A stretch of DNA of 62,737 bases, filler included, from Polymyxa betae A26-41 (Eukaryota > Protista > Endomyxa: Phytomyxea), in NCBI GenBank assembly GCA_003693705.1. It is 7 parts of 7 records of this genome, joined end to end, with 100 filler letters (N's around TTAATTAATTAA, not from the genome) between each part and the next. Parts side by side here need not be neighbours in the genome. Positions count along the whole stretch, not along the records: positions 58,901 to 62,737 come from RBZT01000537.1; 6 more parts are not named here. One strand, 5' to 3'. The notes beneath the pieces were generated by a model that did no database searches, was not told the origin of the DNA, and worked only from the letters and a program-made list of their open reading frames with translations. Within the stretch, counting starts at the first letter, position 1. Every line of letters starts with the position of its first letter. A program made the position numbers and the translations under genes. Positions 58,901-62,737 of the stretch are shown here, in pieces.

Positions 58901-61518
58901 GCAGCTGGAGTTCCTGGCGGTCGTCAACCTGACCGGCGGCATCATCAGCAGCGCTGGCCCACTCGGTCTTAACGGAGTCGTCTTCAATCCATCCAGGATT
59001 ATCACCAACTATACCGAGCTGTTCTACGAATCCGGCGAGCAGGTGATCGGAATTCGAGCGCCCTTTGTTCACAGCATTGACAATCTCGCTTCAGCTATCG
59101 GTAGCGGTGCCCGTTGAGGCCGAAATCTTCGCTCAAATGAATGCTCCTGAGTTTCGCGATAACCCGCTCGAGACGAAACTAAGCACCTGGAATTCGGATA
59201 AGCCGACCTTTACCAGATTCGTGATCCAGCCATTGTTCTGTGGAACGACGCACGCCCAGGCCTATGTTGTATGGGGTACTGCCCGATTCTCGTCCTATTT
59301 TCTATCATTGATGTTCTGTTCAGGAAATGCCATCACACCCTCGAAATATTCGTTCTTCAGCAAAGCTGTCGATATGGGGAATCACGGATTCGTGGCTTTC
59401 ATGGAGTACGATCACCACACGAACCGATTCATCACATCAAGTTCGTATCTGAAGACGAGCGCGACTGAGATCGCCTATCCGGATTTTCAAGGCCGAATCC
59501 CTGATTCCGAACTTTCGTTTGTTGCCGAGACGCAGCAGGATCATTACATGGGGACTTTAAATATCGGTCCGAATCTGGATTGTTTTTCGATTCGATTTCG
59601 CTGACAAATCTGCAGATGATACCAGTTATATCTACTCCATTGATCATGTTATGAAATCGTCGATTGGAGACGCCGAGCTCGACATCTTCCATCCGAAAGC
59701 GGTTTATGTATTCGGCCTTCCATCCACAGCTATCAAATCGACCGTTATGCACCTACTGGTCTGGCATCTGCCTGTGATTGCCTTCATTGTTATCATGAGC
59801 GCTGTAGCTGTGTATCTATTAAGTAGGCGAGCCTTTCCTCCTCTCTTATCGTATTGATGGCTGTTTTTTAGTAAAGAAATTCGTGCAGCCAATGCAGCAC
59901 CTGCTGGACTCTGTAAAGAAGAAAAAGTAAGGCGATAATCGCTACTATCCTGAGACATTGAATTCGCCTTTCAGAATCAACAATTTCAATGAGTCCATTC
60001 GTGCCATGAAATCGAATAAATCCGTCTTCTGGATTTTTCTTCTCCAGCTGCTGCTTTTAGAAGCTCTATTGGGAGGACTGATTGTCGTGAATCGTCGAAT
60101 TCTGGAGGCTGCTGTTGCTGATTTCACTTCGGCATCGGAAGAGGTATCTAAACACCATCTTGTCCTATAAATTTCTCAGTCGGCGTAGGGACCGGAAATC
60201 GCGGCTTTAGTAGCTGATAAGCATCGCGAATATTGCAGCCTATCTACAAGGATGGGCTGGATTCACATCATCAACCAGACCAGAGCTGGCAATTTTTCTG
60301 GTCATACTGTTCATGAATTAAACGACGCAGCTGCTTTCTTGAACGTCAGCAGCGTTTCCATCATTGGCGCGTTCGTCCTGTCTGCCTTTTTCAAAGCCAT
60401 TGCTGAATTCTTGCTCAGAAACACTTTGGTTCTCGAAAGCACCATGAAAGCTGCTCTGGGAAAGCCGTTTCCGCTCGATGCGCTTATCAGCTTTTTCAAT
60501 GCATCGACGGAATCACGAAGAGCGATCGTGACGACGAATTTCTGGACGCCCGATGAGTTCGAACATTTCATCCCAGCCGAAACCCAAACGAGCGTCTCGA
60601 TGGAGCTCGCGGTGGTGAAGATTATGGCGTCACCGATCAGCTCCATTTCAGGTAATGTCAGGCTTTGATTGTTTATAGTCTGAGACGACGAATCGCAGAA
60701 GAAGGCAATTCGTTGGTTCAAGGCGACGTGATCGGGGCGATCGTGGCTGTCGACCTCGTCAATGGTCATCCATCGCTTCTCGAAAGCTCCGTTGGCGTCT
60801 TTCGCACCGGCTACTTTGGTAAATTCGACGTCGAAACCTTCATTCATCGCATGCTGACGATCGCTGGCAGGATTATACGCTTGGAATCGGTTTAAGCGTG
60901 AATTCCAACTTTTAACGTCTCGGTATAAGGTCGGCCCCGGGTCTCGCTCTTCATCAGTTCGCCTCTAATTCTGTTTAGCAATCGAAAACCGATCCTGAAC
61001 TGCTGAATGTGGAATTGGGCGAGAACGGTCACGATGTTCTGTCTCGTGGCCTTTCGAGCTCGTTCTCATCAAGCCGGCTGTATGTAGAGGATCACGTCAT
61101 GATCGATTCGAAGCCCACCACGGTCGCCATCGTCCCTCTGATCCCCGTCCATGAACCATCGTTCGACGAATGCACTCTCCATGCTTATGTCGTTCGAGGG
61201 CTGGACGATACCGAATGGCTCGATCTTCTTCGACATCAGAGCGAGTTCGAGTTCGCGATCATGGCCGTCGAGCTGATCGCCGCCATGCTGGTGCTGGGCC
61301 TCACGTACTGGCCCATGAACCGGTTCCTGAAATCGATGGAGAAGGCGTTCAATGTTCCGTCATTGTCGCGGACCCATCGCGAGAAGATCGACCGTCATGC
61401 GGCGTCGATTATGGGTCTCGATCAAGCAACCAGGTCCGCATCAGCCGGTCCGATAATGCACTCGACTGCAGGGCAGGTCGTACATTCCACAGGTACCGAG
61501 AGCGGGCAGGTGGAATGA
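58901..61518 (+). CDS. Multi-exon membrane protein with two tandem Cache-like extracellular sensor domains (5' end in the gap)
   Basis: Domain 1: LEFLAVV..IISSA..GVVFNPS..FTRFVIQPL..VVWG..PKAVYVFGLPSTAI + TM. Domain 2: TM + GKPFPLD..VVKIMASPI..VIGAIVAVDLVNGHPSLLE..GYF..AYVVRGLDDT + TM. Short introns, e.g. 59043-59094. Confidence 0.7.
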
Positions 61519-61799
61519 TAATACCCTGGATGCATTAATCGTATGATTTGTATCTGCAGCAGTATCCATTACAAACAACTGTAGTTTTTAAAACGACATC
61601 AAATCTTTTTACTATTTGTTTAGAAATCATTCCACAGATATTAAACTGCAATTTTAAAAACTACTCCAGGTAATTTTTATATATCTATCATAATATTAGA
61701 AGTGAGCTATTTGCGGTATGACTGTACTGTATGAGTATCCATTACTAAAACTACGTTTTTTGAACGACGTGAAATTTAGTTTAACCAGGCGATTAAACA

Positions 61800-62737
61800 G
61801 GCGTATCACATCGATACGGTCGGGGCCTCGCATCCAGAGCTGCAGGCAATCGCCGTAGATCAACATCTCGACGCCGATTACTGTCGTAGCGAGATCTGCT
61901 TGATAGGGATCACCAGGTGGATAGGCTGCAGAAGGCTGAAGAGCGACGGTGACCTGACTTCAAAACGGTCGGCGAACTGGTAGCATTGCACGCGACGCCA
62001 GTAGGTTAGGCCGAATCGGGCGCATCATCGCAGCCAGAAGCGAACCGTGTGCAGCGACGACATCGACGATGTCGCCGAGCGTCGCGGTGACGACGATTAG
62101 GACAGGACGCTAGTTGGATTTCAGATCTGATGGTCATCAGCTGCCCGCGTTCGGCTGATACATCGGTCATTGATCTGCTGCAAAAACCCTATCACAGTCG
62201 CATGTTGGAAGTTCGTGGGACAACGCCAATCGTTTTGCTCACTATTACACATCGTATGCGAATATTTGAAGAAATCTGTGATTTGCTGCCATTCATTACT
62301 ATGGAATGCGCTTGATCAAGAGATTTCGATGCCACCACCAGTTGGTCCTTCGTTCTTGCAAGATGCGTTATGATGCCTCTTCTTTCTGGTTTGTACATAT
62401 ATCGGAGGAGACTAATAATGGCGACGAAATCAAATGCCAGCAATGAAGCTACTAAGCGCGCGCGCGCCATGCAGATGAATGATTTTTCTCCCGCAACAAC
62501 TGCGTTGGACGGGATGTTGCTTGAAAAGGCTATTCCAGAAATCCAGGCAGTCTGTCGTAATGTACGGCAAATTCATATGATACAACATTTGATGACGCTG
62601 TCAACTATTTTAGGGTTTAGGGTTGATAAACTGTTTATTTTGTAAACTTATTGCAGAGAAGCGGCTCGCGCCCGAACGAGAGCCGCGCTCAGGTCGAAGA
62701 CATTCGCCAACTTCCCTCCCGCGTTCACGTTCGCGTC
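61800..62737 (-). pseudogene. Broken intron-containing gene of unknown function
   Basis: Hydrophobic ORF piece (LVASLLAFDFVAIISLL) and an acceptor-like aaccctaaaccctaaaatag at 62605-62624. Confidence 0.25.

What the first reader, a model, noticed from the sequence alone, without database searches (positions are those of the whole stretch)
58901..61518. Eukaryotic receptor with two bacterial-chemoreceptor-like Cache ectodomains and no output domain
Seen: the spliced product reads Cache-TM-TM-Cache-TM and ends in a short low-complexity tail (..GTESGQVE*). No HAMP/MCP, histidine kinase or cyclase sequence is visible. The two ectodomains share a motif order with each other. From memory, they also match the periplasmic domain of cyanobacterial PilJ/HmpD-type methyl-accepting chemotaxis proteins (IEYATLV..IIANA..GEVFNP..LIRYTVTPV..LVSGDIVNGK..GGYSAVY..VLVRGTPETAL). 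Spliceosomal introns show the gene is nuclear rather than contamination. Inference: an undescribed eukaryotic ligand-sensing family, possibly horizontally acquired, that signals through a partner protein, e.g. in zoospore chemotaxis or host sensing.
Basis: partly seen in the sequence, partly recalled or inferred. Interest (0 to 1): 0.8.

Follow-up and report, generated by a model that had tools for sequence, protein, structure and literature searches.

The report
Protist protein with twin bacterial sensors
An intron-rich gene of a protist, probably the beet-root parasite Polymyxa betae, encodes a membrane protein with two copies of a small-molecule sensor domain of the type used by cyanobacterial chemotaxis receptors, with no signalling domain in the part we can see.

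Summary
Ten GT-AG introns of 45-52 nt give one unbroken 709-aa frame reading ectodomain-TM-loop-TM-ectodomain-TM-71-aa tail; the 5' end is cut off. Both ectodomains map in register onto the periplasmic domain of cyanobacterial PilJ-type chemoreceptors: seven exons lie on two diagonals, and exon 8 scores hhalign 94%, E 1.8e-7. That domain folds as a double Cache of the dCache_3/Cache_3-Cache_2 type. An independent language-model search puts the first repeat's proximal module nearest dCache_3 (0.92). Pfam misses the protein, and the two repeats are not directly alignable. The first helix of a HAMP domain survives after repeat 1; no MCP, kinase or cyclase domain follows repeat 2. The same DNA sits on a 672-bp scrap of a sugar-beet assembly (BVRB_035400), which suggests Polymyxa betae; this is inferred. 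No eukaryotic relative was found, but the search was too weak to reach even the cyanobacterial proteins. Best reading: a bacteria-derived, duplicated sensor that lost its output and works through a partner. Open points: the missing N-terminus, a two-gene reading, expression, ligand, and a specifically cyanobacterial donor.

The parts
58902..59042 (+). exon 1 of the visible model (gene continues 5' beyond the piece); repeat 1, distal module first strands
   Evidence: profile columns 101-133, weak alone (12 of 1000 shuffles), on diagonal
59043..59094 (+). intron, 52 nt
   Evidence: GT-AG, TTGAC at -18, frame-restoring
59095..59275 (+). exon 2, repeat 1 distal module
   Evidence: open frame; no profile score on its own
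59276..59323 (+). intron, 48 nt, in frame and stop-free
   Evidence: GT-AG, TTGAT at -16, poor codon score
59324..59566 (+). exon 3, repeat 1 end of distal and start of proximal module
   Evidence: profile columns 197-262, 0-3 of 1000 shuffles
59567..59615 (+). intron, 49 nt
   Evidence: also spliced out in public protein KMS65497.1
59616..59822 (+). exon 4, repeat 1 last strand, stalk helix and most of TM-A
   Evidence: profile columns 289-331, 0-1 of 1000 shuffles; AF2 model
59768..59873 (+). TM-A (aa 240-258; spans intron 59823-59871)
   Evidence: hydropathy 2.77
59823..59871 (+). intron, 49 nt
   Evidence: GT-AG, TTGAT at -18
59872..59926 (+). exon 5, remnant of first HAMP helix (59880-59921), cytoplasmic loop
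   Evidence: rank 1 of 559 windows, 11.0 bits
59927..59974 (+). intron, 48 nt, joining the two repeats; holds an in-frame TAA at 59928
   Evidence: GTAAGG donor, TTTCAG acceptor; chance bridging 1.4-4.7%
59975..60143 (+). exon 6 with ATG at 60006 and TM-B (60033-60089)
   Evidence: hydropathy 2.55
60144..60188 (+). intron, 45 nt (no clear branch word; a 36-nt form also fits the frame but leaves a stop)
60189..60370 (+). exon 7a, repeat 2 N-terminal helices
   Evidence: open frame; no profile score on its own
60371..60418 (+). probable in-frame intron, 48 nt
   Evidence: size, T content and CTGA at -16 match the others; removal brings repeat 2 to 305 aa; its codon score does not separate it from exon; not RNA-proven
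60419..60651 (+). exon 7b, repeat 2 distal module
   Evidence: profile columns 139-172, not significant alone but on diagonal
60652..60698 (+). intron, 47 nt
   Evidence: GT-AG, frame-restoring
60699..60818 (+). exon 8, repeat 2 core with the D-L-V-N-G motif
   Evidence: hhalign 94%, E 1.8e-7; flanks alone 0 of 20000 shuffles
60819..60870 (+). intron, 52 nt
   Evidence: GTAAAT donor, CTGAC at -17
60871..60929 (+). exon 9, repeat 2 proximal module start
   Evidence: profile columns 221-231, 4-9 of 1000 shuffles
60930..60978 (+). intron, 49 nt
   Evidence: GT-AG, CTAAT at -14
60979..61518 (+). last exon: repeat 2 proximal module, TM-C (61246-61302), 71-aa tail, stop
   Evidence: profile columns 263-341, 0-1 of 1000 shuffles; no onward splice to a long frame

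Best explanation
One nuclear gene of a protist (probably Polymyxa betae) encodes a plasma-membrane protein built from two tandem copies of a bacterial sensor unit, TM-dCache-TM-start of HAMP. The unit is of the dCache_3/Cache_3-Cache_2 type seen in cyanobacterial PilJ-type MCPs and kinases. Shown: the gene structure, the homology and fold type, the 3-TM visible topology and the absence of a C-terminal output domain. Inferred: a bacterial receptor gene entered the lineage long ago, lost everything after the first HAMP helix, was duplicated in tandem and gained introns after the duplication (intron positions differ between repeats). Also inferred: a fourth TM precedes repeat 1, both dCache domains face outside and bind small solutes such as root exudate or host metabolites, and binding moves the downstream TM helix. 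With no enzyme of its own, the protein would pass that motion through the 37-aa loop and 71-aa tail, or through the membrane helices, to a partner such as a channel, cyclase or kinase.
For: Intact 709-aa frame with 10 uniform introns. Seven exons on two diagonals of one cyanobacterial profile. Exon 8 match survives masking of the seed motif. P0001, which lies outside the seed motif, scores 17.6 bits (6.6 without its TM), 0 of 1000 shuffles. The cyanobacterial domain folds at pLDDT 94 and matches dCache structures at E about 1e-8 and Cache_3-Cache_2 kinases at TM 0.83. Language-model features of P0001 give dCache_3 at 0.92 with 174 shared features. Repeat 2 is 305 aa against 283-315 in cyanobacteria. 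HAMP-helix remnant. Intron columns differ between repeats. Precedent for bacterial binding domains reused in plasmodiophorid membrane proteins: PMC4815078.
Against: The 5' end is missing, so an N-terminal output is not excluded. No RNA evidence. No Pfam Cache model is hit. Most exons are weak alone. The AF2 model of the protist module used cyanobacterial rows, so it is partly circular, and its matches are modest (best Foldseek E 9e-3; Z up to 7.5). No ligand, partner or orthologue is known. Organism identity is inferred from a beet-assembly scrap.
Confidence: 0.5

Rival explanations
1. The protein binds solutes but does not signal: it is a capture or accessory subunit for nutrient uptake or adhesion, or a drifting remnant of a receptor that has lost its function.
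For: No output domain. Several residues invariant in the cyanobacterial domain are changed (G165 to V, K171 to H). Repeat 1 has lost the D-x-x-N motif. No orthologue found.
Against: The frame is intact over 709 aa and 10 introns, and the second copy differs only by one missense change and one intronic base. The HAMP first helix is retained after repeat 1.
Confidence: 0.18
2. It is a complete receptor whose output domain (kinase, cyclase or TPR-type adaptor) lies in the missing N-terminal cytoplasmic part, which would place it in a known receptor class.
For: At least about 100 residues, including the first TM, lie beyond the piece's edge (profile column 101 at aa 3). Some cyanobacterial members have 100-145 residues before TM1, with TPRs.
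Against: In this receptor type the output follows the second TM and HAMP. Repeat 2 starts with a short basic stretch directly before its TM, which suggests that the duplicated unit had a short N-terminus.
Confidence: 0.15
3. Two neighbouring paralogous genes, each TM-dCache-TM-short tail. The first ends at TAA 59928 and the second (423 aa) starts at ATG 60006.
For: A stop lies in frame right after the first HAMP-like helix, and an ATG lies 9 codons before TM-B. Plasmodiophorid genomes have very short intergenic spaces with overlapping UTRs (PMC4815078).
Against: The gap holds a 48-nt intron with the best donor of the gene, in frame; shuffled gaps are bridged in only 1.4-4.7% of trials. The gap is 75 nt and 43% GC, whereas the region after the final stop is 29% GC.
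Confidence: 0.12
4. The ectodomains are not Cache domains; the resemblance is chance plus a biased comparison set.
For: No Pfam, NCBIfam or PDB sequence hit. Exons 2 and 7a give no score.
Against: Masked and motif-free tests stay significant. Two colinear diagonals. The independent language-model result names dCache_3.
Confidence: 0.05

Closest known systems
Cyanobacterial PilJ/PixJ/HmpD-type MCPs and related histidine kinases (dCache_3-like periplasmic domain)
   Same: Homologous ectodomain of about 300 aa between two TMs, same motif order, HAMP first helix after the TM. The genes collected sit behind CheY and CheW genes.
   Different: No full HAMP, GAF, MCPsignal or kinase domain. The unit is duplicated in one chain. 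The gene is spliced and has no che operon. Identity is only 13-22% over the proximal module.
dCache_3 (PF14827) / Cache_3-Cache_2 (PF17201) / sCache_3_3 (PF17202) sensors of bacteria (Upadhyay et al., PMC4822843)
   Same: Fold class and nearest language-model neighbours.
   Different: The Pfam models do not score the protist exons. In that survey dCache_3 and Cache_3-Cache_2 are tabulated mainly with kinase, MCP and diguanylate cyclase outputs.
alpha2delta/CACHD1-type eukaryotic dCache_1 proteins (PMC8915833)
   Same: Eukaryotic membrane proteins with two double-Cache domains of bacterial origin. alpha2delta has no enzymatic output and acts on a partner channel (own knowledge).
   Different: Those are dCache_1, nested, with a VWA insertion in all eukaryotic cases. 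Here the domains are tandem, each has its own TM, there is no VWA, and no R-x-W-Y amino-acid motif is visible.
Cache-HAMP class III nucleotidyl cyclases of Naegleria, Euglena and kinetoplastids; plant CHASE and fungal Sln1 kinases; GPR158/179
   Same: Bacterial-type extracellular Cache sensors in eukaryotes.
   Different: All carry a cyclase, kinase or 7TM output. None is visible here, and the Cache subtype differs.
Plasmodiophora brassicae SBP/PBP-7tm_3 fusions (PMC4815078)
   Same: A prokaryotic solute-binding domain built into a plasmodiophorid membrane protein.
   Different: Different binding fold, and fused to a 7TM domain.

Membership tests
Cache superfamily, double Cache | Extracytoplasmic region between two TM helices | tested here: met
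   Repeat 2 is 305 aa between TM-B and TM-C. For repeat 1 only the downstream TM is in the piece.
Cache superfamily, double Cache | PAS-like membrane-proximal module leading into a stalk helix and TM | tested here: met
   P0001 model pLDDT 85.7, five-strand sheet, top matches Cache/PAS (alignment-guided). Independent dCache_3 features 0.92.
Cache superfamily, double Cache | Long N-terminal helix plus membrane-distal PAS-like module | tested here: inconclusive
   Exons 8, 7b, 3 and 1 map on the distal module of a domain that folds as dCache. Exons 6, 7a and 2 give no score there, and no whole ectodomain was folded because joined models were left out.
Pfam dCache_3 / Cache_3-Cache_2 | Score above the Pfam gathering threshold | tested here: not met
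   No Cache hit exon by exon. The test is weak: whole cyanobacterial proteins scored only E 0.02-0.1 or nothing, though some carry PF14827.
PilJ/HmpD-type methyl-accepting chemotaxis proteins | Homologous periplasmic sensor domain | tested here: met
PilJ/HmpD-type methyl-accepting chemotaxis proteins | Complete HAMP domain after the second TM | tested here: not met
   Only the first helix: clear after repeat 1 (11.0 bits), doubtful after repeat 2 (1.4 bits, rank 7 of 559). No Pfam HAMP.
PilJ/HmpD-type methyl-accepting chemotaxis proteins | C-terminal MCPsignal domain | tested here: not met
   71-aa tail then stop; no splice route to a long downstream frame.
PilJ/HmpD-type methyl-accepting chemotaxis proteins | Encoded with CheW/CheY/CheA genes | tested here: not met
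   Spliced eukaryotic locus with no such gene 3' of it; the 5' side is not available.
alpha2delta/CACHD1 dCache_1AA | VWA insertion and amino-acid-binding motif | tested here: not met
   No VWA hit, no room for one in the 305-aa repeat, and no R-x-W-Y string in the exons.
Cache-HAMP cyclases or kinases of eukaryotes | Catalytic output domain in the same chain | tested here: inconclusive
   Absent from the loop and C-terminus; the N-terminus is missing.
Any ligand-sensing receptor | Binds a ligand and triggers a response | not testable with these tools
   Needs experiment.

The most novel reading that the evidence does not exclude
A plasmodiophorid root parasite took a cyanobacterial-type chemotaxis sensor, stripped its bacterial output, duplicated it into a four-pass two-sensor protein, and uses it with a eukaryotic partner to detect host-root chemicals during zoospore homing. 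This would be a non-GPCR candidate chemoreceptor for a group whose chemotaxis receptors I found no report of.
Probability: 0.15. Interest if true: 0.85.

Novelty: new variant of a known kind. Interest (0 to 1): 0.56.

Why it matters
Cache domains in eukaryotes are known mainly from alpha2delta/CACHD1, CHASE and Sln1 kinases, Cache-HAMP cyclases and GPR158/179. A dCache_3-type domain in tandem TM-Cache-TM repeats without an output would be an additional, probably independent acquisition from bacteria, and one that Pfam does not see. If the host is Polymyxa betae, it is a concrete and easily expressed candidate for how plasmodiophorid zoospores sense roots. Spongospora zoospores swim to glutamine in a Ca2+-dependent way, and the one paper retrieved names no receptor (PMC8921600). 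It also shows that protein KMS65497.1, filed as sugar beet, is very probably not a plant protein.

Tried and rejected
Nothing found: Pfam and NCBIfam on exons; PDB sequence search; word search with exons 7 and 10; atlas features for exon 7; exact DNA and peptide-pattern scans of metagenomes; plasmid tblastn; exact look-up of the last-exon ORF (27). hhalign of single exons other than exon 8 was not significant. Direct comparison of repeat 1 with repeat 2 was not significant. The profile word search returned 114 proteins, cyanobacterial wherever named, so no non-cyanobacterial comparators and no tree. Rejected: bacterial contamination (10 spliceosomal introns); a sugar-beet gene (45-52-nt introns of 46% GC and GC3 of 60% are unlike beet, own knowledge); an extra TM inside repeat 2 (mostly removed by the probable intron 60371-60418); an 89-nt intron 60890-60978 (gave stops); a hidden C-terminal output by further splicing (longest continuation 37 aa into AT-rich DNA).

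Full report
Gene structure. The piece (58901-62737) was read and translated in three frames. Candidate introns gave a model of ten exons and nine GT-AG introns of 45-52 nt with a single 725-aa frame. A scan for hidden in-frame introns found one more that matches the others in size, T content and branch word, 60371-60418. Removing it gives 709 aa and shrinks a hydrophobic stretch inside repeat 2 from 2.05 to 1.62; its codon score does not prove it non-coding. One intron is independently present in a public annotation (P0001). Hydrophobic helices lie at aa 240-258, 296-314 and 620-638, the first and last followed by basic residues, which fits out-in / in-out / out-in. The tail is 71 aa. No plausible donor in it leads to a frame longer than 37 aa, and the DNA after the stop is 29% GC. 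RNA evidence could not be obtained. The joined translation was used only inside scripts, for the frame check, hydropathy, coordinates and one comparison of the two repeats with each other.

Source organism. The full-library phmmer with the exon 2-3 frame returned one protein, P0001. It is KMS65497.1, 'BVRB_035400' of Beta vulgaris, on a 672-bp contig of assembly GCA_000510975.1, identical to 59227-59899 except for one substitution and one intronic T. Introns of about 49 nt with 46% GC and GC3 of 60% are unlike beet genes (own knowledge). They resemble plasmodiophorids: P. brassicae has about 4 introns per gene of 60 bp (PMC4471660), and Polymyxa betae, the obligate beet-root parasite, has a 45% GC genome (PMC6328671). 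A short TTTTAGGG-TTTAGGG run at 62608-62622 matches the P. brassicae telomere unit, which is a minor hint. I infer P. betae as a contaminant of the beet assembly at roughly 80%; it was not tested directly.

Homology. Pfam, NCBIfam, PDB and word searches gave nothing. They encode TM-ectodomain-TM-HAMP-(GAF)-MCPsignal proteins behind CheY and CheW genes, and several relatives are named PilJ or PixJ by JGI. An alignment of 52 ectodomains folds at pLDDT 94 as a long helix plus two PAS-like modules. It matches dCache structures such as DvhD, KinD, TlpA and DctB at E 1e-8 to 1e-7, and Cache_3-Cache_2/sCache_3_3 kinases of Chloroflexota, Aminicenantota and Planctomycetota at TM 0.83. Against this profile exon 8 scores hhalign 94%, E 1.8e-7 and 19.6 bits. 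With the nine seed columns masked, its flanks still beat all 20,000 shuffles, although the register was fixed by the seed. With a 127-sequence profile, P0001 scores 17.6 bits (6.6 without its TM), exon 4 5.6, exon 3 3.3-3.8 and exon 10 6.0-6.9, each matched by at most 3 of 1000 shuffles. Exons 1, 3 and 4 fall on one diagonal (offset 98 to 75) and exons 7b, 8, 9 and 10 on a second (offset -288 to -307). Both ectodomains are therefore copies of the same domain, although they do not align directly. Repeat 2 is 305 aa against 283-315 in cyanobacteria. Repeat 1 starts at profile column about 100, so its first TM and long helix lie beyond the edge. Exons 2, 6 and 7a give no useful score.

Fold. Independent of my profile, language-model features of P0001 gave dCache_3 first (0.92, 174 shared features; 9 of the ten best named hits share a family or clan; chance rate 4-10% for such a score). 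AlphaFold2 on P0001 with cyanobacterial rows (13-22% identity) gave pLDDT 85.7 and a five-stranded sheet running into a stalk and TM helix. Top matches were chemoreceptor sensor domains, CHASE4, PAS and dCache, but at modest scores. This model is partly circular and counts as consistent, not as proof.

Output. After TM-A, exon 5 is the best of 559 windows for the first HAMP helix of the cyanobacterial proteins (11.0 bits); the stretch after TM-C is only rank 7. Nothing else of HAMP, MCPsignal, kinase or cyclase is present. The simplest history is gain of a bacterial TM-dCache-TM-HAMP-output gene, truncation inside HAMP, tandem duplication, then intron gain: introns fall at columns about 145, 198 and 269 in repeat 1 and 109, 179, 219 and 234 in repeat 2. 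The order of events is inference.

One gene or two. A TAA at 59928 lies inside the intron that joins the repeats, and an ATG at 60006 precedes TM-B, so two tandem single-sensor genes are possible in a genome type with very short spacers. A 45-52-nt in-frame intron bridges shuffled gaps in only 1.4-4.7% of trials, and the gap is 75 nt at 43% GC, so one gene is favoured.

How it most likely works. Inferred: two outward dCache domains bind small solutes, each moves its downstream TM helix as in bacterial class I receptors (established for that class, own knowledge), and the short amphipathic helix in the loop and the tail relay this to a partner protein. This parallels alpha2delta, which carries Cache domains without an enzyme and acts on a channel (own knowledge). 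Ca2+-dependent chemotaxis to glutamine is documented for Spongospora zoospores, but nothing links this gene to it. Rivals are a non-signalling binding protein or remnant (0.18), an output in the missing N-terminus (0.15), two genes (0.12) and not Cache (0.05).

Comparison with what is known. Eukaryotic Cache domains are described, and attributed to transfer from bacteria, in alpha2delta, plant and fungal kinases and a Naegleria cyclase (PMC4822843), in Euglena and kinetoplastid cyclases (PMC6366073) and in GPR158/179 (PMC12716839). Eukaryotic dCache_1 proteins carry a VWA insertion (PMC8915833). This protein fits none of them and is not an MCP. I found no paper on Cache proteins in plasmodiophorids; the library lacks most subscription journals. 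The lack of eukaryotic relatives is weak evidence: the one large search used a single 157-aa frame that did not reach the cyanobacterial homologues either. A cyanobacterial donor is plausible, since the D-x-V-N-G motif and domain length agree, but it is untested because no non-cyanobacterial sequence was scored.

Verdict. A real, intact, spliced gene with a bacterial sensor subtype and a tandem architecture that I did not find described for eukaryotes: a new variant of a known kind, interest 0.56. The missing 5' end, a single known copy, and no expression or ligand data hold the score down.

Noticed in passing
L121 (AYZY01084921.1, GCA_000510975.1), 148-631: Protein KMS65497.1 / BVRB_035400, filed as Beta vulgaris, is a fragment of this protist gene, so the beet assembly appears to hold non-plant contigs.
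   Followed up: partly
window 61780-62200: GC-rich (57-62%) stretch after an AT-rich spacer, with a likely minus-strand intron 62110-62161 and open frames at 61963-62109 and 61699-61959: probably the 3' part of a convergent neighbour gene. No Pfam hit.
   Followed up: partly
window 62608-62622: Two telomere-like units (TTTTAGGG, TTTAGGG), inside a candidate minus-strand intron 62598-62647; the first equals the P. brassicae telomere unit.
   Followed up: partly
window 61510-61559: A possible alternative last intron (50 nt) would replace the final two residues by 37 residues of AT-rich sequence; no domain results.
   Followed up: yes
L001-L120 (cyanobacterial genomes): The PilJ-type periplasmic domain is a well-folded double Cache with 26 invariant columns, yet Pfam scores it weakly or not at all and no solved structure matches it by sequence; I found no ligand named for it.
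   Followed up: partly
L117, 921-4451 minus strand: A 1177-aa protein carries the seed motif at residue 993, unlike all other hits; left out of the profile and not examined.
   Followed up: no
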